IMG/VR virus record: IMGVR_UViG_3300033997_000092
Span: 124,001-188,000 of that record
Length of the DNA: 64,000 bases
Reading direction: 5' to 3' (one strand)
The stretch's first letter is position 1. Each line of letters opens with the position of its first letter. The notes below the pieces were generated by a model. The model was not told the origin of the DNA and did not search any database. It saw only the letters and a program-made list of their open reading frames with translations. Of this stretch, positions 10,216-23,787 are shown piece by piece. Both the position numbers and the translations under genes were made by a program.

Positions 10216-10503
10216 ATGCTTGCGTCTTCTATGAGAAATATAAAAACTAAACCTTCACGCGCCTTATTGATTGCTCCTATGTTCAGTGACGTTGATATGG
10301 AAGCCTGTGAAGTTATCCACGACTCTACTGTAAAGTGTTATATATTACCAATCAAAGTAGAGGATCTGGCTCGCCGTGTAGTGAAATCAAACCATTTCTT
10401 AGGTCGCACAAGTTCTGATAAGTTGTATGTTATGCAACTGAAAACAGGACAGACTTACAATGTTATTGATTTGGGTAACGACAGCCTGATGATACTGATA
10501 TGA
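10216..10503 (+). CDS. Hypothetical protein
   Basis: 95-aa ORF with AGGTGA RBS. Confidence 0.6.
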   Translation: MLASSMRNIKTKPSRALLIAPMFSDVDMEACEVIHDSTVKCYILPIKVEDLARRVVKSNHFLGRTSSDKLYVMQLKTGQTYNVIDLGNDSLMILI

Positions 10504-11609
10504 TGTTCAAACCTATTAAGAAGGCGGCCACGACCGCTTTCGACTTTAATGCTTCAATGCAGGATTACAATCCAAATCGTCATGCGCCTTTGAGTAAGCT
10601 GGTTAATGAAGCCATGACTTCTGAGGTAGTTCTTCCTCGTGGCCGTGGTCCTGAGTTTAGACCCAGCTCGTTTCCAAGTTGTCCTATTTTAAACTGGATG
10701 AAGCTGATTCGATTTAAACATCTTGGCAATGTCGAAGCACTGCATTATTTCGGAATGGAGTATTATACTTCTGTTGGTACAACTGTCCACGAGAAGATTC
10801 AATACTTCATGGGCTTCACAGGTAAAATGTGGGGACACTGGAAGTGCATTAATCCAACGTGCCGCGAAGCACACAAAGCGGCTGACAAGCTCGACCCGTT
10901 AGGCAATGTCATTGCTGAAGGTAAGCCAACACGCCGATGTACAACAAACAACAAGTGTCCTGAATGTGCTGAGCCTATGTTCTACATAGAGTTCACTTTG
11001 AAGTTCCGCGGTGTCAAAGGTCACATCGATGGAATTGTAAAACTGGACAACGGTAAATGGATTGTTCTTGATTACAAGACAACTTCCATGAAGAAAGTAC
11101 GCAAAGGTTTATTTCCTGAAAAGAAACACTTGCACCAACTACCATTCTACACTTACGTCCTTGAAAAGAAATACGGCAAGAAGTATGGCATGAAGATTGA
11201 CCACTTCTCGCTTATCTATATACCCAGAGATAACCCACGAGCTTTCTTTGAGTACAAGGAAAAGTGGACAGACAACTGGCGTGTGCGCTGTGCTAAGCGC
11301 TTTGATGCCGAATGTGCTAAATGGGAAGCAATACGTGAAGACGTTGCTGGTGATACATTCCACAATGTTGTTGCCCACAAACCTTGCGCTTGTCCTGCCG
11401 ACTACAGAAATAAAATGTACGGCTTTGGTTCCTGTGTTATGGAATCAGTCTGCTTCTCTAGCGGCAAACTCAAAGGAACACTAGCTACGTGGTTAGACAT
11501 TCACAAACGCAAACCTCCAAGACTAAAAGCTTTCGAGGACGTTGTTGAAATGGTCACCCACGGTGAGTACAAAGCCAAAGCAACAAAATCTAAGGCACTC
11601 TCTATATGA
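10500..11609 (+). CDS. Cas4-like PD-(D/E)XK exonuclease
   Basis: RPSSFPSCP, GTTVHEKIQ, GHIDG, DYKT, QL..Y, C-terminal Cys cluster, inserted CxxxxC..CPEC. Confidence 0.8.
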   Translation: MMFKPIKKAATTAFDFNASMQDYNPNRHAPLSKLVNEAMTSEVVLPRGRGPEFRPSSFPSCPILNWMKLIRFKHLGNVEALHYFGMEYYTSVGTTVHEKIQYFMGFTGKMWGHWKCINPTCREAHKAADKLDPLGNVIAEGKPTRRCTTNNKCPECAEPMFYIEFTLKFRGVKGHIDGIVKLDNGKWIVLDYKTTSMKKVRKGLFPEKKHLHQLPFYTYVLEKKYGKKYGMKIDHFSLIYIPRDNPRAFFEYKEKWTDNWRVRCAKRFDAECAKWEAIREDVAGDTFHNVVAHKPCACPADYRNKMYGFGSCVMESVCFSSGKLKGTLATWLDIHKRKPPRLKAFEDVVEMVTHGEYKAKATKSKALSI

Positions 11610-11989
11610 AGAACACATTGGAGAAGTTACTTAGAATACGATCTAAGTTACCTCAGTCTGTTCAAAGTATACTTGATGTCAACTTGGATCAATCAATACC
11701 CAATATCCATATCTATCTTCACAACATATATTGGGCGCACATACACTTACAGGAAGCAATCACCGAACGTGACCGTATAGTGCCTGCAAAGAAAAGACAC
11801 TTGCAGGTAGTTAAAGCTTCAGGTAAAATAACGAACCACTATAGTTCAGTCAAGCTTGAGTCTTTAGACAGAGCATTGATAAGGCTGGACCGTGCGATTG
11901 TAACCAAACAGGATATAATCGAAATGTACGCTAAAAAAGTTGAGGAACTTTTAGATGCTCATAGAACTAAATTTAGCAAAACCGCTTGA
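11606..11989 (+). CDS. Hypothetical protein
   Basis: 127-aa coupled ORF. Confidence 0.6.
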   Translation: MKNTLEKLLRIRSKLPQSVQSILDVNLDQSIPNIHIYLHNIYWAHIHLQEAITERDRIVPAKKRHLQVVKASGKITNHYSSVKLESLDRALIRLDRAIVTKQDIIEMYAKKVEELLDAHRTKFSKTA

Positions 11990-12377
11990 GTCAACTAGTG
12001 GCAACAGTGACTTGAAGTTGCAGACACGTTTAGGCGATACTGGATCTTCAAACATTCGTCCAGAGGGACATGAAGAATTGGTAAAAGCTGAACAAGCCCG
12101 AACTAAAAAGCGTTTGCGTAAGATGACGTTGGACTTGGCTGTTGACGATGCTCAGCTAGATGAAGAAACCAAAAAACAAGAGAAAGAGCTTGATAAACTA
12201 CGGCAGGTTAATTTCTCTTTTGGTACTAAGTCTAAAAAGCCAAGTAAAGGTGTTAAACCAAAAGCTCCTGAAAAAGACGAAGAGGAAGAACCTGAAGAGG
12301 AGCCTGATGAAGGTGAATCTGATGCTGGCGATGAAGAAGACCAGGCCGACGACGAAGAAGCTGAAGGCGACGAGTAA
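11955..12377 (+). CDS. Hypothetical protein with acidic tail
   Basis: 140-aa ORF, GAGGA RBS. Confidence 0.65.
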   Translation: MLIELNLAKPLESTSGNSDLKLQTRLGDTGSSNIRPEGHEELVKAEQARTKKRLRKMTLDLAVDDAQLDEETKKQEKELDKLRQVNFSFGTKSKKPSKGVKPKAPEKDEEEEPEEEPDEGESDAGDEEDQADDEEAEGDE

Positions 12378-12388
12378 CATCTATAAAA

Positions 12389-12396
12389 CTGTAAAT
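12389..12396 (+). promoter_or_regulatory. Phage-specific CTGTAAAT promoter motif (representative; also 1781-, 5245-, 10187-, 19218+, 23682+, 35571+, 40532+, 40574+, 41202+, 52326+)
   Basis: Recurs in the correct orientation ~20-100 nt upstream of replication genes, the tRNA and the acidic-protein genes. Confidence 0.7.
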
Positions 12397-12439
12397 ACCT
12401 GTCTATACGACGGGTATTTTTATTTTTGGCGGAAAAAAC

Positions 12440-13399
12440 ATGGCTAAAGACAAAGTGAAAGAAAAGAAGAAAGCTAAGGCTGTTGACAAGAATGATGTCA
12501 AGTCAGGCAAGAAGCCAGGCAGGAGAGAACAGGCTGCCAGCTCCAAGAAGCTGATTAAGTCAAAAGGTCCTGAGTTTAAAAAGAACAACAAGACCGCCTC
12601 ACGCACTACTGATTTTACGGTAGATGATTTCAAAGAAGCTCCGTATAACCCGCGATATATCAGCCCTGTAGAATTGCAGCGCTTAGGTAAATCGATGACA
12701 ACATACGGTGACTTGAGCGGTATTGTTTTCAACAGGCACTCGGGTGTGACTATTTCTGGTCACCAGCGCTTGAAGCAAGTACGCTTGTATGAACACGGCA
12801 CTGTACTGAAAGATGTAAAAGATGACGGTTACGGTACTGTTGCTGAAGGTTACGTATGGTACAAAGGTCCTAACGGCAAAGTTCGCATTCCATTACGTGT
12901 AGTTGATTGGTCAGATAAGAAAGCTGAATTCGCAGCCAACATCGCAGCAAACGCACACGGTGGTTCGTTCGATAACAAACTGCTGGCTAACTTGGTTGAA
13001 GCAATTGAACCAGGTGACGGCGAGTTCGATATTGATTTACTTGGTATCGATCCTATTACAATCAAAACACTTCCTTATGAAGACAAGATCGGCGATGCTA
13101 ATAAAGAAACGTCTCCGTCAGGTTCCGGTCCATCGTTTGCAGAGTTCAACTCAGAAAGCTTCGACGGCGAGTTGGTACATGAATGTCCTCGTTGTAGTAT
13201 GCGCTTCAACGACAACGGTGAAGAAGTTGTCCGTAAAGGTTACTCTGAGCCTGAAGACGATGACGAAGAAGATGAAAAGCCTTCAAAGAAAAAGTCAAAG
13301 TCAAAGAAGGACAAAGACAAGCCTTTGAAGAAAGGCGCAAAAGAGCTTGCTGAGTTTTCTACTCCGGCTAAGAAAAAGCCCAAGAAGAAATCAAAATAA
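12440..13399 (+). CDS. ParB/Srx-like domain protein with Zn ribbon and Lys-rich termini
   Basis: APYNPRYIS, YGDLSGIVFN, ISGHQRL, ANIAAN, HECPRC. Confidence 0.8.
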   Translation: MAKDKVKEKKKAKAVDKNDVKSGKKPGRREQAASSKKLIKSKGPEFKKNNKTASRTTDFTVDDFKEAPYNPRYISPVELQRLGKSMTTYGDLSGIVFNRHSGVTISGHQRLKQVRLYEHGTVLKDVKDDGYGTVAEGYVWYKGPNGKVRIPLRVVDWSDKKAEFAANIAANAHGGSFDNKLLANLVEAIEPGDGEFDIDLLGIDPITIKTLPYEDKIGDANKETSPSGSGPSFAEFNSESFDGELVHECPRCSMRFNDNGEEVVRKGYSEPEDDDEEDEKPSKKKSKSKKDKDKPLKKGAKELAEFSTPAKKKPKKKSK

Positions 13400-13411
13400 A
13401 AGGAACGATTC

Positions 13412-14479
13412 ATGGCCAAAACAAAAAAGGCTGAAAAAGAATCGGCAGCAATGCGTATCAGTAGGCTGGTACCATTCGCTGTCCCTTCTATTAAGAAAAT
13501 CAACAAACATCCTAAACGCTATAAGTCCATAAGCTTGTTCGCTGGCTGTGGTGGCAGTAGTACGGGAATGAAGATGGCTGGATTTGATGTAATCTATGCC
13601 AATGAGTTTGTTGATATTGCCGCCGATACTTATGCTGCCAATGCTACATCACATACAAAAGTTGATCGCACAGACATTCGTAAAATCAAGTTCACTTCCC
13701 TTATGCGTGAACTTGGACTTAAAGAAGGCGAACTTGATCATATGGACGGTTCTCCTCCTTGCTCTAGTTTTAGTACAGCAGGTAAGCGTGAAGAAGATTG
13801 GGGTAAAGAGAAAGCCTACTCCGAAGATAAAGTCCAACGTACGGATGACCTGTTCCATGAATTCTGCCGCGCGCTACGTGCGTTTAAGCCAAAGACTTTT
13901 GATGCAGAGAATGTTTCTGGTCTTGTGAAGGGCATGGCTAAAGGTTACTTCCGTGAGATTGCTAAGCACCTTGAAGATTGTGGTTATGTTGTTGCTGCAC
14001 AGCTTCTTGATGCTAGTTGGCTCGGTGTTCCGCAGGCCCGTCAACGTATTGTGTTTGTTGGTGTCCGCAAAGACCTTGCAAAGAAGTACGGCTTCAAGCC
14101 TGTGTTTCCTAAACCTCTGTATCGTCAGGTTACTGTTCGTGAGTGTTTGCCTGACATAGCACGTATCAAAACGAAAGTACAGAGCGTTATCAAGTACGTT
14201 GATAGTAACAGGCCTAACAGTACGATTACAGCCAGTGATAGTTTAACTAGCCCGACAGCTAAATTCAGTGACGGTGGCTACATTGAAACATTTGACGGCG
14301 AACAACGCAAGTACAACATAGATGAACTGCGCGTCATCTGTGGGTTCCCTAGCGATTTCAAATTGTTAGGAACCTATGAACAACAATTTGAACGTCTTGG
14401 TCGTAGTCATGTGCCTGTGCAGATGTATTGGGTATGTAAAACTATTGCCGATGAAATTCTCGATAAGATTAAGGATTAG
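13412..14479 (+). CDS. C5-cytosine DNA methyltransferase family protein; predicted carboxymethyltransferase
   Basis: SLFAGCGG, GSPPCSSFS, ENV, PQARQRI, GFP; motif X reads GRS instead of GNS. Confidence 0.9.
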   Translation: MAKTKKAEKESAAMRISRLVPFAVPSIKKINKHPKRYKSISLFAGCGGSSTGMKMAGFDVIYANEFVDIAADTYAANATSHTKVDRTDIRKIKFTSLMRELGLKEGELDHMDGSPPCSSFSTAGKREEDWGKEKAYSEDKVQRTDDLFHEFCRALRAFKPKTFDAENVSGLVKGMAKGYFREIAKHLEDCGYVVAAQLLDASWLGVPQARQRIVFVGVRKDLAKKYGFKPVFPKPLYRQVTVRECLPDIARIKTKVQSVIKYVDSNRPNSTITASDSLTSPTAKFSDGGYIETFDGEQRKYNIDELRVICGFPSDFKLLGTYEQQFERLGRSHVPVQMYWVCKTIADEILDKIKD

Positions 14480-14481
14480 TT

Positions 14482-15258
14482 ATGTCTGAGAGTGGAGATA
14501 ACCACGTAGCCGATGATGGTGCTAAATGGTCCTTTGACGAAAAGGTAACTGCTTCGTTTGACGCTATGCTAGCCGACAGCATTCCAAGCTACGAAACTAT
14601 GCGTAACCTGTGTTTCGAGCTTGGTAAAAACTTTGTCCACAAAGGCAGCCTTATTGTTGACTTGGGCGCCAGTCGCGGTCAGAGTATACAGCGCTTTGTA
14701 GATCATTTCGATTCTATTTACGCGCCGACTGCCTTTGATGTTACTGGTCTTTCATCTGATGGTGTACAGCACGTACTCTTTGAGATTAGTCCTCCTATGA
14801 TGGACGTACTCAAAGATAAATTTTCATTGGCACCAAATATAATGTTGTGTCCAAACGACATTACTGTCCGTGGAAACATCAGTGCTGTGTGCAAGCCAAA
14901 AGCAGCCAGTTTGATTATGAGTATTCTGACAATTCAGTTTACTCCGATTGAGTACCGATTGCAGATCATCGATGAAATCTATCAGAGCTTAGAGCCTGGC
15001 GGTGCTTTTATTTTTGTTGAGAAAGTAATAGGCAATTCAGCACACATTGACCGACTCATGGTAAAAGAATACCTGGCACTAAAAGCCGATCACGGTTACA
15101 CTCAAGAGCAAATCAACAAGAAACGCAAAGCTCTTGAAGGTGTTCTCGTTCCTGTAACCGCCAAGTTTAACGAAGAAATGTTGCGTGATAGTGGATTCCG
15201 TTCTGTTGACTGTTTCTATCGTCACTTAAACTTTGCTGGCTGGATAGCTATCAAATGA
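14482..15258 (+). CDS. cmoA: Carboxy-S-adenosyl-L-methionine synthase (CmoA-like)
   Basis: WSFDEKVTASFDAMLADSIPSY, DLGASRG, LTIQF, L.PGG.FIFVEK, KRKALEGVLVP, NFAGWIAIK. Confidence 0.85.
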   Translation: MSESGDNHVADDGAKWSFDEKVTASFDAMLADSIPSYETMRNLCFELGKNFVHKGSLIVDLGASRGQSIQRFVDHFDSIYAPTAFDVTGLSSDGVQHVLFEISPPMMDVLKDKFSLAPNIMLCPNDITVRGNISAVCKPKAASLIMSILTIQFTPIEYRLQIIDEIYQSLEPGGAFIFVEKVIGNSAHIDRLMVKEYLALKADHGYTQEQINKKRKALEGVLVPVTAKFNEEMLRDSGFRSVDCFYRHLNFAGWIAIK

Positions 15259-16094
15259 AGAAAAAGAAACTTCCAAAAGTAAGGAAACTATTGGGAGAAG
15301 CATTGCAGCCACATCGTAAAAAGCGTTGTGGCGTTTTGCTTTCTGCTGGTGTGGATTCTCACAGTGTTTTACATGCCTGTTTGGATGTAGGCATACGACC
15401 ACTCGTAATAAGCTTTACTCGTCGTGATCACGAAAGCCGTGACTTCAAATCGGCACGTGAAGCTGCAACTCGTTTAGGATTGGATTTCTTTCCTGTCTAT
15501 CTTAAATCAGATCCAGAAGTTCTTGTACGTTATTTGCGCCATGCTGCAAAGCACGGTGTTCGTGGTAAAGCCGCTTTCGAGTGTCTATATCCGATGATGG
15601 CAACTGCCCGTAAGTTAAAACGTAAAGGCATAAAGATCGATTGTTTATTTTCCGGTTACGGTGCCGACGCCTTCTTTGCTTTGAGTAAGAAAGGATGTAT
15701 GCACTACCGTGACAAGATGGCTGAATACGCACTGGAAGCACATGCCCGATATGTCCGTAAAGGATCCCAGCTTGATATTCTCAAACGGTATTTCAAAGAT
15801 GTTGCCTGTGTCAAGTACAGTAGTCCGTGGTGTGCCGAATCTATCCGTGACAGCTTTACAAGACACACGTACTCACATGACGACTTAAACAAGCCAAAAC
15901 AAAAATGGCCTGTACGCAGAGACTTTGACAAAGAGTTCTCTGAGTCAAAAATTTTCAACCACACAAACTACCAGTTGGGTGATAGTGGTATTAGTGCAAT
16001 GTTCCTGCAGTTGCTCGATCACCGCATAAATAGCAAAAACTATAAATCAACTACTGGTATATACAACGACATTGTTCGGAGTCTCGATAAATGA
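15255..16094 (+). CDS. Asparagine synthetase-like ATP-dependent amide ligase (synthetase domain only)
   Basis: PP-loop LLSAGVDS, FSGYGADAFF, KW.VR; no N-terminal Ntn glutaminase domain. Confidence 0.75.
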   Translation: MKKKKLPKVRKLLGEALQPHRKKRCGVLLSAGVDSHSVLHACLDVGIRPLVISFTRRDHESRDFKSAREAATRLGLDFFPVYLKSDPEVLVRYLRHAAKHGVRGKAAFECLYPMMATARKLKRKGIKIDCLFSGYGADAFFALSKKGCMHYRDKMAEYALEAHARYVRKGSQLDILKRYFKDVACVKYSSPWCAESIRDSFTRHTYSHDDLNKPKQKWPVRRDFDKEFSESKIFNHTNYQLGDSGISAMFLQLLDHRINSKNYKSTTGIYNDIVRSLDK

Positions 16095-16570
16095 ATCACC
16101 TGCATCACCTGTATAATCAAGTACGCAAAGCAATACTTGCCGAAGCTACAATGGATAAAGAAGATCGACTTCTCCATAGTTGGCAATTTTTAGTTCAACT
16201 GAAAGGCGTCAACTACGTTGTTGGTAAGACAGGCTACAATACTATGTTTTACCGTATAGGTGATAAGGGCGATACAGTTACTGGCTACCCAGATGATATA
16301 CTCAAAGTGATATTGTCTTGGACCAAGGAAAAATATACAGGCTACATTATTTATGATGGCACTGAAATACGCCGTAAGTCAAAAAGCATCGAAAGCTTAC
16401 TCGAACGTACTGCTAAAAAGGACTACGTCATATTTGGTGTTCGGCCAGATAATACATGGTCCGCTTTGTATGAGGCCAACAACAGCCTAAAAGGTTACCG
16501 TTGGGTAAAAGTTAAAGCACCTGCATCTGACGTTAAAGTTAAAAAGACAAAGTCCAAAACAAAGCACTAA
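16091..16570 (+). CDS. Hypothetical protein
   Basis: 159-aa ORF coupled by ATGA overlap to the AsnB-like gene. Confidence 0.65.
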   Translation: MNHLHHLYNQVRKAILAEATMDKEDRLLHSWQFLVQLKGVNYVVGKTGYNTMFYRIGDKGDTVTGYPDDILKVILSWTKEKYTGYIIYDGTEIRRKSKSIESLLERTAKKDYVIFGVRPDNTWSALYEANNSLKGYRWVKVKAPASDVKVKKTKSKTKH

Positions 16571-16604
16571 TTTGTTTGTACACAAATAATGTGTCGGAGG
16601 CACT

Positions 16605-17270
16605 ATGTCTAAGCAATATCGTGGTATACGTTCCAGTGTTCGTAAAACCAAATCAGAAGCCCGTCGTATGTTCGAGGCTAGACAGGAGCAATTAAAGAGC
16701 TTGTCAGCTCGTAACATAAAAGCCAAGCCTTTACGCAATAGCGTTAAAGATGGTTCGCATCCACCAATGCCTGATCGGGCTGTACGCATTGTTCCACTCA
16801 AAAAGATAGGTACTCTTGTTCAGCAGTTGCCTGATACTCCGATTACTCGTAAGGGTATGACGTTACGGCAATTGATGACAAAGACACCAGCGTTAATGCG
16901 TAACAACTCTGACGATGTTCAAATTGAAACATTGTCGAAGAAGAAAACAAAGTCAGGTTTGCCTGTAGTAGTTGCTAAGGGTTATACTGTTGACCCGTTT
17001 CGTCCAAAAGCAACTCGCCGTGTGCATGAGCTTTATATTGTAGGTCTTGATTCTCAATCGACTCCGATCAGTAAGCAGCGCCGTGTGCTTGTAAGTTGCA
17101 GTTGTGAAAACTACTGCTTTGTTTTTGAGTACGCGAATGCCTATCACGGCGCCAGTAAAATTCTTTACGGAAACGGCCAGAGTCCAGACTTTACTAATCC
17201 AGGTCTGTTACCTGGACTGTGTAAGCACTTGTACTCATTGGCTGAAATTGTACGTGAGAGAGGTATGTAA
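16605..17270 (+). CDS. SWIM-type Zn-finger protein
   Basis: VSCSCENY...LCKHL; GGAGG RBS. Confidence 0.65.
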   Translation: MSKQYRGIRSSVRKTKSEARRMFEARQEQLKSLSARNIKAKPLRNSVKDGSHPPMPDRAVRIVPLKKIGTLVQQLPDTPITRKGMTLRQLMTKTPALMRNNSDDVQIETLSKKKTKSGLPVVVAKGYTVDPFRPKATRRVHELYIVGLDSQSTPISKQRRVLVSCSCENYCFVFEYANAYHGASKILYGNGQSPDFTNPGLLPGLCKHLYSLAEIVRERGM

Positions 17271-17536
17271 TGGCTTGTGAAGGATGTCGCCGTCGCCGCG
17301 AAGCTTTGAAGCGTATGGCAAGCAATGTTATAAATTCCGTGACCCGTGCTGTCAGTCCAAGTCCTGAACCTGCACAATCACGTGGTACTGCATGTGCAGG
17401 ATGTACAACAAAAGCAACATCAGCAGGCTGGGTTAATGTGTGTCGTATTTGTTTGGGACAATCAGATCCGACGCCTTCTCCGAACCACTCTAATGAGCCT
17501 AAATGTAACTTATCTGTTTGTGAGCGTAGAAAATGA
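17270..17536 (+). CDS. Small Cys-rich protein
   Basis: MACEGCRRRR, several CxxC; coupled on both sides. Confidence 0.55.
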   Translation: MACEGCRRRREALKRMASNVINSVTRAVSPSPEPAQSRGTACAGCTTKATSAGWVNVCRICLGQSDPTPSPNHSNEPKCNLSVCERRK

Positions 17537-18192
17537 CACAAGAAAATCAATTAAATGGAACTGAATCCGCAGAAGCGGCTGAGTTGCGCCACGCCCGTGA
17601 ATTAATATCAAAGGCCGAAGATGTGATACAAAGACTTCGTGCCAGTTCTGACGTAGCCACTGAGGAGCTTGGCTCTGTTACAAGTAAGCTGCTTGACCTG
17701 CGTGTTGAACATCGCCTTTTAAAGTCCAAGCTTGATGCCACTTTATTCGACAAAGAAGCATTCAAGCAAAAGTGCGACAAGTTAGAAACAACTGTTAAAA
17801 ACTTGGAAGCCGAACTTGTCAAGCGTAGCACTCAGCTATTACGTGCTTCCAAGCGTAACCAAGAATCACTTGAATTATTTTCCAAGTGCGCTGTACTTTT
17901 CGCTTCTTATGTTTCAAGCTCGAAGCTTCCTGTTTATGTACTCACTCGCTTGAAAGAAATAAACTTTCCTAAGCCAAATACGATCCGTCGTGTTGTTGGT
18001 TTGCCTGCAGAAGCGTGTGCTGTAGAAGCTGTTAAGGTCGTGTTTGATCCGTTTAAGTCTATCAACAAAACTCCACCGACATTCACAAATTCAGATATGC
18101 CGATGGACTACTTCTTAAACGCATTTTATCACACCGTGTCTCCTATCGTTATTGAAGATGCGGAAGTGGCTGCTGGCGAGGAAGCCTCGTAA
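17533..18192 (+). CDS. Coiled-coil hypothetical protein
   Basis: 219-aa ORF with heptads. Confidence 0.65.
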   Translation: MTQENQLNGTESAEAAELRHARELISKAEDVIQRLRASSDVATEELGSVTSKLLDLRVEHRLLKSKLDATLFDKEAFKQKCDKLETTVKNLEAELVKRSTQLLRASKRNQESLELFSKCAVLFASYVSSSKLPVYVLTRLKEINFPKPNTIRRVVGLPAEACAVEAVKVVFDPFKSINKTPPTFTNSDMPMDYFLNAFYHTVSPIVIEDAEVAAGEEAS

Positions 18193-19208
18193 TGCTCGAA
18201 GGTAACCTTACTGGTGGCCAAATACAGGAAGTCATGGATAGGCTACTGTATGATGCACTCGCTCCTGTTATCAGATACACTAACGTATTTGACACCCAGC
18301 TTGTGTATCTTTTGGCTACCGTAACAAAGAATAAAAAGCGCAAGGTATGCGCTGTAAGCAGGCCTGAGACAATTGACTTTTTGTGTAAGGCACTTGCTAC
18401 TTCTGACCCAGAAGAAAAAATGATGTACATAAAGAAGTTGAAGATCGAACGCTCGTTCATTCACGTTTTCCTTAAACGGTTTGTTCAGGCGTATAAAGGT
18501 CCAATCTTCTCATTGTACTACCAGTTTATGTCAGACACTAAAAACAGACAGATATATTCCAAGCGCATGAAGCCTTATTTGGCAAGTGTTGGTTGTTCTG
18601 GCCGTTCCGAAATATTCATAGCGATAACTTCCTGTGAATCTAGTCTGACCCGTTTCTACCATTACTTCGACCGGGTCATTTCTCAGTATTACAAGCTGTG
18701 CTACTTAAAAGCAAAAGGCTTGGTTGATACTAATCCGAATAACAACTATGATTTCCATGACCTCGTGCAGAATTTAAGGCAGCGTACCATAACTGCCTTG
18801 AATAAGTACGATGCCTCTAATGGAGCCTTGACATCTTACATCAAGTGGTGGTTATTCAACAGCTTGACTTGTGGTAGTGGCCAGCATGAATACGGTTTGG
18901 CGTACACTGTTCCACAAAACGTAAAAAGAAAGTTGATGCAGTCTGACGGTCTTGGTGTCAACTTCTCTGTTAGTATGGACTCATTATTATCTGAATCTGA
19001 TGATGGTGAGAATTCAAACTTACACAACCTTATAGCTGGTGAGACTCCAGAGCTGGACGATGAAATCGCGTCCATATCGGAACTCAACCGTATGTATATG
19101 TTTGCCAAGAACGCTGACCCTCACGGCATAGCTAGACTGAGTTTAGAGCTGCCTGAAGTATTCAGTCCTAAAGAGTTGGCTAACATGCGTAAGACAACTG
19201 TGTTATAA
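18192..19208 (+). CDS. Phage sigma70-family RNA polymerase sigma factor
   Basis: Region-2-like DLVQNLRQRTITALNKYDASNGALTSYIKWWLFNSL, then YTVP and SVSMD. Confidence 0.7.
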   Translation: MLEGNLTGGQIQEVMDRLLYDALAPVIRYTNVFDTQLVYLLATVTKNKKRKVCAVSRPETIDFLCKALATSDPEEKMMYIKKLKIERSFIHVFLKRFVQAYKGPIFSLYYQFMSDTKNRQIYSKRMKPYLASVGCSGRSEIFIAITSCESSLTRFYHYFDRVISQYYKLCYLKAKGLVDTNPNNNYDFHDLVQNLRQRTITALNKYDASNGALTSYIKWWLFNSLTCGSGQHEYGLAYTVPQNVKRKLMQSDGLGVNFSVSMDSLLSESDDGENSNLHNLIAGETPELDDEIASISELNRMYMFAKNADPHGIARLSLELPEVFSPKELANMRKTTVL

Positions 19209-19258
19209 AAGCCGTATCTGTAAATAAACAGATCGATACTAAAAGCAAGGAGAAAACT

Positions 19259-20476
<1,218 letters not shown>

Positions 20477-23710: not shown

Positions 23711-23787
23711 GGCCCCTTAGCTCAGTTGGTTAGAGCACTCCCCTCATAAGGGATTGGTCTCCAGTTCAAATCTGGAAGGGGCCACCA
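23711..23787 (+). tRNA. tRNA with CAU anticodon, most likely tRNA-Ile2 (lysidine, reads AUA)
   Basis: GGCCCCT/AGGGGCC acceptor stem as in enterobacterial ileX, D arm, CT-CAT-AA loop, TTCAAAT T loop, encoded ACCA; lacks initiator features. Confidence 0.9.

What the first reader, a model, noticed from the sequence alone, without database searches (positions are those of the whole stretch)
15255..16094. Glutaminase-less asparagine-synthetase-like ligase: the amine donor is open
Seen: a 279-aa, very basic protein with only the synthetase domain (SAGVDS, SGYGAD) and no N-terminal Cys glutaminase. Inference: it adenylates a DNA-bound carboxyl and couples ammonia or another amine (amino acid, polyamine), so the final base could be a new one. 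The coupled 159-aa ORF (16091-16570) may be an accessory factor.
Basis: inference. Interest (0 to 1): 0.65.

Follow-up and report, generated by a model that had tools for sequence, protein, structure and literature searches.

The report
CmoY-type phage DNA amide ligase
This gene is a jumbo-phage homologue of CmoY, the ATP-dependent ligase recently shown to attach glycine to carboxymethylated cytosine in phage DNA; the system is already published, but this copy's amine is untested and its active-site signature is unusual.

Summary
Window 15255-16094 (+) encodes a 279-aa protein of pI 9.8 with a PP-loop (SAGVDS) and SGYGAD. It has an asparagine-synthetase C-domain fold and no glutaminase domain. 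The complete 261-kb phage genome has no glutaminase gene.

It sits in a tight operon: ParB-like, C5-methyltransferase, CmoA-like, the ligase, then a 159-aa ORF. This matches the CmoA/CmoX/CmoY system of Synechococcus phage S-B43 (Yang et al., Nat Commun 2025, PMC12783734). There CmoX makes 5-carboxymethylcytosine and CmoY ligates glycine to it with ATP. The window's methyltransferase has the SPPC motif and the Arg350-equivalent. The ligase is 31% identical to SpCmoY over its full length.

The amine remains open. The ligase belongs to a narrow, well-supported clade that has Ala where 124 of 125 other homologues have Arg. It also has Tyr at the AsnB-Glu348 / beta-lactam-synthetase-Tyr348 position. 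Some clade members lie outside CmoX/CmoA modules.

The 159-aa ORF is a jumbo-phage-restricted, module-linked gene: 26 of 27 loci have CmoY and CmoA nearby. Its function is unknown.

The parts
12440..13399 (+). ParB-like (ParBc) protein, 319 aa, first gene of the module
   Evidence: It matches phrog_620 (ParB-like) at 5e-29. It is 50% identical to PaBG_00176. ParBc proteins are reported as frequent CmoX neighbours (PMC12783734).
13412..14479 (+). CmoX-type DNA cytosine-C5 carboxymethyltransferase, 355 aa
   Evidence: Pfam DNA_methylase scores 7e-49. The closest solved structure is SpCmoX 8YF3 at 3.6e-57, against 1.5e-19 for M.HaeIII. The GSPPCS catalytic motif is present, and Arg in LGRSHVP aligns with SpCmoX R350.
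14482..15258 (+). CmoA-like carboxy-SAM synthase, 258 aa
   Evidence: NCBIfam TIGR00740 (CmoA) scores 2.9e-35, which is 122 bits and below the 193-bit equivalog cutoff. It matches phrog_4752 at 4e-64. It is 29% identical to the biochemically verified SpCmoA. Its stop overlaps the ligase start as ATGA.
15255..16094 (+). CmoY-like AMP-forming amide ligase (glutaminase-less asparagine-synthetase C-domain), 279 aa; this is the finding
   Evidence: It is 31% identical to SpCmoY with E 1e-23. The AF2 model has pLDDT 95.9. Foldseek finds beta-lactam synthetase at 5e-10 and AsnB 1ct9 at TMq 0.77. A family profile hits AsnB at 1.6e-8.
15342..15359 (+). PP-loop S30-A-G-V-D-S35 (ATP pyrophosphatase motif)
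   Evidence: It aligns with AsnB SGGLDS. S30, G32, D34 and S35 are at least 98% conserved in 133 homologues.
15651..15668 (+). S133-G-Y-G-A-D138 motif; Y135 is specific to the narrow clade
   Evidence: It aligns with AsnB S346-G-E348-G-S-D351 and with beta-lactam synthetase T-G-Y348-G-A-D. Y135 is found in 8 of 8 narrow-clade members; the commonest residues elsewhere are T, I, L, H and M.
15729..15731 (+). A159, where 124 of 125 other CmoY-like proteins (SpCmoY R150 included) have Arg
   Evidence: The flanking Tyr/Phe anchors align without ambiguity in L006 and P0007.
16091..16570 (+). 159-aa ORF (P159 family, phrog_23597), basic C-terminal tail, translationally coupled to the ligase; module-linked, function unknown
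   Evidence: The ATGA overlap is confirmed. It is 33% identical to PaBG_00179. Of 27 IMG/VR loci, 26 have CmoY and CmoA within about 3 kb despite shuffled gene order. It is absent from the other 86 of 93 CmoY loci.

Best explanation
The gene encodes a CmoY-type ligase in a PaBG-like jumbo phage (261 kb, direct terminal repeats). The steps below are all inferred by homology and gene context. The phage CmoA-like enzyme makes carboxy-SAM. The CmoX-type C5-methyltransferase homologue transfers the carboxymethyl group to cytosine C5 in phage DNA, giving 5cxmC. The 279-aa ligase binds ATP through its PP-loop, adenylates the 5cxmC carboxylate, and an amine attacks to form an amide, giving a hypermodified cytosine. 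The hypermodified base presumably blocks host nucleases. The enzyme has no glutaminase domain, so the nucleophile must enter from solvent. Glycine or another small alpha-amino acid is the single most likely amine (about 0.4), because the only characterised homologue uses glycine. This clade's altered active-site signature (A159, Y135, E161, Y166, Y239) means glycine cannot simply be transferred. The 159-aa ORF is a lineage-restricted companion of the module with unknown role.
For: Published biochemistry covers the homologous system: SpCmoA makes Cx-SAM, SpCmoX makes 5cxmC at GC sites, and SpCmoY plus ATP plus glycine makes 5gcxmC. 5gcxmC was found in S-B43 virion DNA (PMC12783734). The ligase aligns with SpCmoY over its full length at 31% identity and E 1e-23. 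The fold is an asparagine-synthetase/beta-lactam-synthetase synthetase domain at pLDDT 95.9. All core motifs are intact. The neighbouring methyltransferase is closest to SpCmoX 8YF3 and keeps SPPC and the Arg350-equivalent. CmoA and the ligase are translationally coupled. Of 63 IMG/VR loci with ligase homologues, 56 have a CmoX homologue in the flanks. Of 93 loci analysed, 86 have CmoX and 86 have a CmoA-like gene. The same ParB-CmoX-CmoA-ligase order is found in Pseudomonas phage PaBG. The module lies among replication and recombination genes. No glutaminase domain occurs in the whole phage.
Against: Nothing has been measured for this protein or for any jumbo-phage homologue. Identity to SpCmoY is only 31%, and the two fall in different major clades. 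The narrow clade replaces the Arg found in 124 of 125 other homologues. Four lineages of that clade (L105, L106, L107, L100) show no CmoA or CmoX in the flanks held. A complete phage from the sister group (G002) has the ligase but no CmoA or CmoX at all. The family is therefore not strictly tied to 5cxmC. The CmoA-like protein scores below NCBIfam's equivalog cutoff.
Confidence: 0.78

Rival explanations
1. Same enzyme and same DNA substrate, but the nucleophile is not an amino acid. It would be free ammonia, giving 5-carbamoylmethylcytosine, or a non-carboxylated amine such as a polyamine or ethanolamine. The product would be a base not yet described.
For: The narrow clade has lost the Arg (A159) that 124 of 125 homologues keep, including glycine-using SpCmoY. 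It has also lost the Asp three residues before it. It has gained a conserved Glu (E161) and several aromatic residues (Y135, Y166, Y239, W192). The S-B43 paper states that several ligase clusters have distinct pocket residues and may use other amines.
Against: I could not show that A159 or the gained residues line the amine pocket. No model coordinates were available, and the paper's pocket residues appear only in a figure. The Arg is also kept in L010, whose phage lacks CmoX, so it may serve a general role. A basic residue at position 165 (7 of 8 clade members) could compensate.
Confidence: 0.3
2. The ligase acts like beta-lactam or carbapenam synthetase. After adenylation, the cytosine's own N4 amine attacks, cyclising 5cxmC to a fused five-membered lactam (a pyrrolo[2,3-d]pyrimidine-type base). 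No external amine is used.
For: The top Foldseek hits are beta-lactam synthetase (5e-10) and carbapenam synthetase, both intramolecular amide formers. The clade-specific Tyr135 aligns with beta-lactam synthetase Tyr348. From my own recollection of the literature, that Tyr is part of a Tyr-Glu catalytic dyad. The clade also gained a conserved Glu (E161) and lost the near-universal Arg.
Against: This is pure inference from a few residues. AsnB gives the best TM-score (0.77). The equivalence of E161 to the synthetase's Glu could not be tested, because the C-terminal half has no sequence-detectable match to solved structures. The N4 amine of cytosine is a poor nucleophile. There is no precedent in DNA.
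Confidence: 0.05
3. The protein does not act on DNA. It would amidate a small-molecule or RNA carboxylate instead, for example ammonia-dependent asparagine synthesis, NAD-synthetase-like amidation, or tRNA cmo5U. Its place in the operon would then be incidental.
For: Some narrow-clade members lie far from any CmoX or CmoA, one of them between NMNAT/NUDIX and NAMPT genes. G002 has the ligase without CmoA or CmoX. A weak profile hit to NH3-dependent NAD synthetase (7e-4) covers the PP-loop region.
Against: In the window the gene is translationally coupled to CmoA and sits two genes from CmoX. The same arrangement recurs in PaBG, L006, L190 and most loci. The score is far below the asparagine-synthase equivalog cutoff. 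The only characterised homologue works on DNA. No CmoB homologue was seen among the module genes scanned.
Confidence: 0.07

Closest known systems
SpCmoY (A0A514ABJ0 / QDH50619.1) of Synechococcus phage S-B43, the 5cxmC-DNA:glycine ATP-dependent amide ligase (Yang et al., Nat Commun 2025, PMC12783734)
   Same: Both are glutaminase-less asparagine-synthetase C-domains of about 270-280 aa with a PP-loop. They align over their full length (31% identity, E 1e-23). Both are encoded next to CmoA and a CmoX with SPPC and the carboxymethyl-binding Arg.
   Different: They fall in different major clades (patristic distance 4.2). The window protein has Ala for SpCmoY R150, Tyr for its Ile in the SGxGAD motif, and QLGDSGI versus QLGSNID. 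Its pI is 9.8 against 5.8. Gene order differs: X-A-Y here, A-Y-X there. The window module has ParB and the 159-aa ORF, and S-B43 lacks both in the 10.7-kb stretch annotated; tblastn found no 159-aa ORF homologue in any Synechococcus phage record. The window protein's activity and amine are untested.
'Asparagine synthase' genes of jumbo phages PaBG (PaBG_00180), Erwinia pEa_SNUABM_5, Yersinia fHe-Yen9-02, Dickeya AD1
   Same: They are the closest isolate homologues (35-40% identity). PaBG has the same ParB-CmoX-CmoA(-159)-ligase module. They share the 159-aa ORF family.
   Different: All keep the Arg at position 159 and lack Tyr135. Many Erwinia/Dickeya genomes insert a DUF1611 gene between CmoA and the ligase and keep CmoX elsewhere. 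None has been characterised; PaBG's gene was listed as a metabolic asparagine synthase (PMC7412058).
Asparagine synthetase B (E. coli AsnB, 1CT9) and human ASNS
   Same: The synthetase-domain fold matches (TMq 0.77). The PP-loop and the SGxGxD motif align. The chemistry is shared: an acyl-adenylate followed by amide formation.
   Different: There is no N-terminal Ntn glutaminase domain and hence no ammonia tunnel. AsnB Glu348 is Tyr here. The score is far below the family cutoff. The C-terminal half is not detectably similar by sequence. The substrate is a DNA base, by homology to SpCmoY.
Beta-lactam synthetase (1JGT/1MBZ) and carbapenam synthetase (1Q15)
   Same: These are the best Foldseek E-values (5e-10). 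The xGYGAD motif with Tyr at the 348 position is shared.
   Different: Those enzymes keep a vestigial N-terminal domain and form intramolecular lactams on small molecules. No evidence here points to cyclisation.

Membership tests
CmoY (5cxmC-DNA amide ligase, Yang et al. 2025) | Full-length homology to the characterised SpCmoY | tested here: met
   BLASTP gives 31% identity over residues 25-276, E 1e-23. tblastn to S-B43 gives 4e-16.
CmoY (5cxmC-DNA amide ligase, Yang et al. 2025) | Asparagine-synthetase ATP-binding domain only, with PP-loop and no glutamine-hydrolysing domain | tested here: met
   No GATase_7 occurs in the whole genome.
CmoY (5cxmC-DNA amide ligase, Yang et al. 2025) | Encoded with CmoA and a CmoX carrying SPPC and the Arg350-equivalent | tested here: met
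   The association is family-wide in 86 of 93 loci.
CmoY (5cxmC-DNA amide ligase, Yang et al. 2025) | ATP-dependent ligation of an amine to 5cxmC in DNA | not testable with these tools
   This needs LC-MS of DNA or an enzyme assay.
CmoY, glycine-using cluster | Pocket residues that bind the glycine carboxylate (paper's Supplementary Fig. 8) | tested here: inconclusive
   The residue list exists only as a figure and is not in the held text. The window's clade has Ala where SpCmoY has R150 and 124 of 125 homologues have Arg. Whether that Arg is the glycine binder is unknown.
Asparagine synthetase B, glutamine-hydrolysing (TIGR01536) | N-terminal class-II glutaminase domain with catalytic Cys, and a score above the equivalog cutoff | tested here: not met
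   The protein starts MKKKK and has no such domain. It scores 37.6 bits against a cutoff of 267.1.
Beta-lactam / carbapenam synthetase | Tyr-Glu catalytic dyad and a vestigial N-terminal domain | tested here: inconclusive
   Tyr135 aligns with Tyr348. The Glu partner could not be mapped. The N-terminal domain is absent.
CmoX (DNA cytosine-C5 carboxymethyltransferase), neighbouring gene | SPPC catalytic motif plus Arg at SpCmoX position 350 (Asn in M.HhaI) | tested here: met
   GSPPCS and LGRSHVP align to the SpCmoX residues. The best PDB hit is 8YF3.
CmoA (carboxy-SAM synthase), neighbouring gene | Match to the CmoA equivalog model | tested here: inconclusive
   TIGR00740 scores 2.9e-35, but at 122 bits is below the 193-bit cutoff. 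It is homologous to the verified SpCmoA (29% identity, 2e-22).
NH3-dependent NAD synthetase (NadE) | Full-length similarity to NadE | tested here: not met
   Only profile positions 10-96 (the PP-loop region) match 2e18, at 7e-4.

The most novel reading that the evidence does not exclude
The hypermodified cytosine of this phage is not the published 5cxmC-glycine amide. Its ligase clade has lost the family-wide Arg (A159) and carries a beta-lactam-synthetase-type Tyr (Y135) plus new Glu and aromatic residues. It may therefore couple a different nucleophile, such as ammonia or a non-carboxylated amine. In the extreme case the nucleophile is the base's own N4, giving a fused lactam. Any of these would give a DNA base not yet described. 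The 159-aa ORF would be a lineage-specific helper.
Probability: 0.35. Interest if true: 0.75.

Novelty: new member of a known kind. Interest (0 to 1): 0.42.

Why it matters
The CmoA/CmoX/CmoY pathway is a newly described route to hypermodified phage DNA. It installs a carboxyl handle on cytosine and then decorates it by amide formation. Only one ligase, which uses glycine, has been characterised. This window shows the system in PaBG/Erwinia-type jumbo phages. It also singles out a small clade whose ligase differs at a position otherwise nearly invariant, which makes it a concrete candidate for a second amide chemistry. If the amine differs, that would add a new natural DNA base and a new enzyme for site-directed DNA functionalisation. 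If the amine is glycine, the finding is routine annotation of a known system.

Tried and rejected
- **Megablast of the module against the phage collection:** no match.
- **Pocket residues from the paper:** they exist only in figures, and the text of the supplements gives no residue list.
- **phmmer of the ligase alone against PDB:** only chance hits to bromodomains at E about 0.3.
- **Profile of the C-terminal half (A3) against PDB:** nothing. A159 and E161 could therefore not be mapped onto AsnB or beta-lactam synthetase residues.
- **Complex prediction of ligase plus 159-aa ORF:** no verdict (score 0.00). This is not evidence for or against binding.
- **Fold of the 159-aa ORF (pLDDT 84.8):** Foldseek against PDB gave nothing below E 0.1. 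VIA-align gave best Z 7.3 to YkuJ and 5.7 to Pur-alpha, covering the N-terminal half only, which is within the tool's stated noise range. The ESM Atlas gave TM below 0.4. Pfam and NCBIfam gave nothing meaningful.
- **221-aa ORF at 16605-17270 as a module member:** rejected, because its homologues lie about 40-180 kb away from the ligase in PaBG and Erwinia genomes.
- **Search for a glutaminase-fused ligase in Pseudomonas phage SM1, to test the Arg's role:** the candidate genes were not asparagine-synthetase-like.
- **Close relative lacking the module (Dickeya JA11):** not retrieved by megablast with the AD1 region.
- **Basicity as evidence for DNA binding:** rejected, because SpCmoY itself has pI 5.8.
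- **Logan contigs behind L098 and L099:** they could not be searched whole.
Full report
**What is there.** The window is part (124001-188000) of a complete 261,032-bp viral record with direct terminal repeats. The finding's ORF at 15255-16094 (+) is real. It encodes 279 aa with pI 9.83 and net charge +25. SAGVDS starts at residue 30 and SGYGAD at residue 133. Only 15 in-frame codons lie upstream of the ATG, and the ATG overlaps the stop of the preceding gene as ATGA. So a glutaminase domain is absent, not merely missed. No GATase_7 domain occurs anywhere in the phage genome, while the same search found it in all 14 control genomes. The 159-aa ORF at 16091-16570 starts with an ATG that overlaps the ligase stop in the same way.

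**Context.** Five tightly packed genes lie on the + strand:
- a ParB-like protein at 12440-13399;
- a C5 DNA methyltransferase homologue at 13412-14479 (Pfam DNA_methylase 7e-49);
- a CmoA-like protein at 14482-15258 (TIGR00740 at 2.9e-35, below the equivalog cutoff);
- the ligase;
- the 159-aa ORF.

Around them are a clamp loader, a primase, a PD-(D/E)XK nuclease, SSB, a UvsX-like recombinase and topoisomerase II. The module therefore sits in the DNA-metabolism region of a jumbo phage.

**It matches a published system.** Yang et al. (Nat Commun 2025, PMC12783734) studied Synechococcus phage S-B43.
- CmoA makes carboxy-SAM.
- CmoX, a C5-methyltransferase homologue, transfers the carboxymethyl group to cytosine at GC sites, giving 5cxmC.
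- CmoY, a glutaminase-less asparagine-synthetase homologue, ligates glycine to 5cxmC with ATP, giving 5gcxmC.
- 5gcxmC was found in virion DNA.

The same paper reports 2,251 associated AMP-forming ligases and frequent ParBc neighbours. It states that several ligase clusters have distinct pocket residues and may use other amines.

**Tests of that assignment here.**
- The ligase aligns with SpCmoY from residue 25 to 276 (31% identity, E 1e-23).
- The methyltransferase is closest to the SpCmoX crystal structure 8YF3 among all PDB chains (3.6e-57, against 1.5e-19 for M.HaeIII). It keeps GSPPCS and the Arg aligned with R350, the residue that contacts the carboxymethyl group.
- An AlphaFold2 model of the ligase, built on 56 homologues, has pLDDT 95.9. 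Its best structural matches are beta-lactam synthetase (E 5e-10), human and E. coli asparagine synthetase (TMq 0.77 for 1CT9) and carbapenam synthetase.
- A family profile aligns the PP-loop with AsnB SGGLDS, and SGYGAD with AsnB SGEGSD.

**Linkage across phages.**
- Among 63 IMG/VR loci that encode relatives, 56 have a CmoX homologue in the flanks.
- After clustering all same-strand neighbours of 93 loci, CmoX-like and CmoA-like genes each occur in 86 loci and ParB-like genes in 50.
- In isolates the closest relatives are annotated 'asparagine synthase' or 'hypothetical' in Erwinia, Dickeya, Yersinia and Pseudomonas jumbo phages (35-40% identity).
- PaBG has the same ParB-CmoX-CmoA-(159)-ligase block. 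Its paper listed the gene as a metabolic asparagine synthase (PMC7412058).

**Mechanism.** By homology, the ligase adenylates the 5cxmC carboxylate in DNA and an amine attacks to give an amide. With no glutaminase domain, the nucleophile comes from solvent. None of this is measured for the window protein.

**Which amine?** This part is still open.
- A FastTree of 133 non-identical homologues places the window protein in a narrow clade of 8 sequences (down to 42% identity, SH-like support 0.945). That clade is far from the SpCmoY clade, which has support 0.98.
- All core motifs are intact: S30, G32, D34, S35, S61, D63, K105, E109, D138, N212, P214, K217, R221, H236, Q240, G242, S244 and I246.
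- The clade has Ala at position 159, where 124 of 125 other sequences have Arg, including SpCmoY (R150), PaBG and L010.
- The local alignment is well anchored. The pattern [YF]-[R or A]-x-x-x-F is preserved in L006 and P0007.
- Also clade-specific are Tyr135 (the commonest residues elsewhere are T, I, L, H and M), Glu161, Tyr166 in a two-residue insertion, Tyr239 (others Leu) and Trp192. Asp156 is lost.
- Tyr135 occupies the position of AsnB Glu348 and of beta-lactam synthetase Tyr348. From my recollection of the literature, those residues act on the attacking nitrogen.

I could not place the clade-specific residues in three dimensions. No model coordinates are returned, and the paper's pocket residues appear only in a figure. 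The C-terminal half also has no sequence-detectable match to solved structures. The signature is therefore a lead, not a result. It makes direct transfer of 'glycine' unsafe. It also leaves room for ammonia, for a non-carboxylated amine, or, as a long shot, for intramolecular lactam formation.

**A caution on the family.** The ligase is not always tied to CmoX.
- G002 is a complete 277.6-kb phage in the sister group. It has the ligase but neither CmoA nor any C5-methyltransferase homologue. There the ligase sits with a thymidylate-synthase-like gene, a PLP enzyme and a GNAT.
- Another sister-group member, P0009, lies in a methyltransferase-ligase-...-CmoA-like block.
- Within the narrow clade, the window, its 95% relative L190, and L006/L111 carry the full module.
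- L105 (75% identical ligase), L107, L106 and L100/L101 show no CmoA, CmoX, ParB or 159-aa ORF in the flanks held. L105 shares no neighbour with the window at all.
- L100 places the ligase between an NMNAT/NUDIX gene and NAMPT.
- Whether those phages encode CmoX elsewhere could not be checked.

For the window itself, translational coupling to CmoA and the conserved block argue strongly for the 5cxmC pathway.

**The 159-aa ORF.**
- It belongs to phrog_23597.
- Seen from the ligase side, it occurs in only 7 of 93 loci, all ParB-bearing jumbo-phage modules.
- In isolates it is found in 53 records, with the same genus counts as the jumbo-phage ligase hits. It is absent from Synechococcus, Staphylococcus and Salmonella phages that have the ligase.
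- Seen from its own side, 26 of 27 IMG/VR loci have both the ligase and CmoA within about 3 kb. Gene order is shuffled among Y-159, A-159-Y, Y-A-159, Y-159-A and A-(DUF1611)-Y-...-159.
- That is good linkage evidence, though it comes from related lineages.
- It also accompanies ligases of different clades; AD1's ligase groups with SpCmoY. So it tracks the phage lineage and the module rather than a ligase type.
- Its fold gave no convincing match. The complex prediction gave no verdict. Its function is unknown.

**Verdict.** The system is known since December 2025, so this is a new member of a known kind. What remains of interest is the untested amine in a clade with a distinctive active-site signature, and the lineage-specific companion gene.

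Noticed in passing
L005:3178-4233 (Dickeya phage AD1), L007:8821-9927, and 12 of 27 loci L191-L217: A DUF1611 gene (PF07755 plus PF17396) sits between CmoA and the ligase in many Erwinia/Dickeya-type jumbo phages. It may be a further hypermodification step. It is absent from the window.
   Followed up: partly
L010:5201-11481 (genome G002, 277,601 bp, DTR): A complete jumbo phage carries a CmoY-like ligase but no CmoA and no C5-methyltransferase homologue. The ligase lies with a thymidylate-synthase-like gene, a PLP-dependent enzyme and a GNAT. This looks like a different base-hypermodification cluster that recruited the same ligase family.
   Followed up: partly
L105:10001-10840, L106:8602-9444, L107:4421-5260: Ligases 57-75% identical to the window's lie in phage contigs that share no other gene with the window's neighbourhood. 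They have no CmoA or CmoX within the flanks held. This suggests the ligase gene moves between unrelated phages.
   Followed up: partly
L100:1-3702 and L101: A narrow-clade ligase lies between an NMNAT/NUDIX (NadR-like) gene and a NAMPT gene, which is an NAD-salvage context. Whether this is functional or incidental is unknown.
   Followed up: no
window 16605-17270: A 221-aa, very basic ORF (pI 10.25, phrog_18980) lies directly after the module. Its homologues lie elsewhere in PaBG and Erwinia phage genomes, so it is probably not part of the system.
   Followed up: yes
window 18192-19208: A 338-aa protein matches a phage 'RNA polymerase sigma factor' family (phrog_17569, 1e-104). It lies four genes downstream of the ligase.
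   Followed up: no
window 23711-23787: A tRNA-Met (CAT) gene.
   Followed up: no
Erwinia phage vB_EamM_Y3, record positions about 10451-19462: A 2OG-Fe(II) oxygenase is annotated in the CmoA/ligase neighbourhood of Y3. It is another possible module variant (feature names; PMC6143709).
   Followed up: no
window 1-64000: The GC dinucleotide is not depleted (observed/expected 1.13). There is thus no sign of avoidance of the GC motif that SpCmoX targets. The target motif of the window's CmoX is unknown.
   Followed up: no
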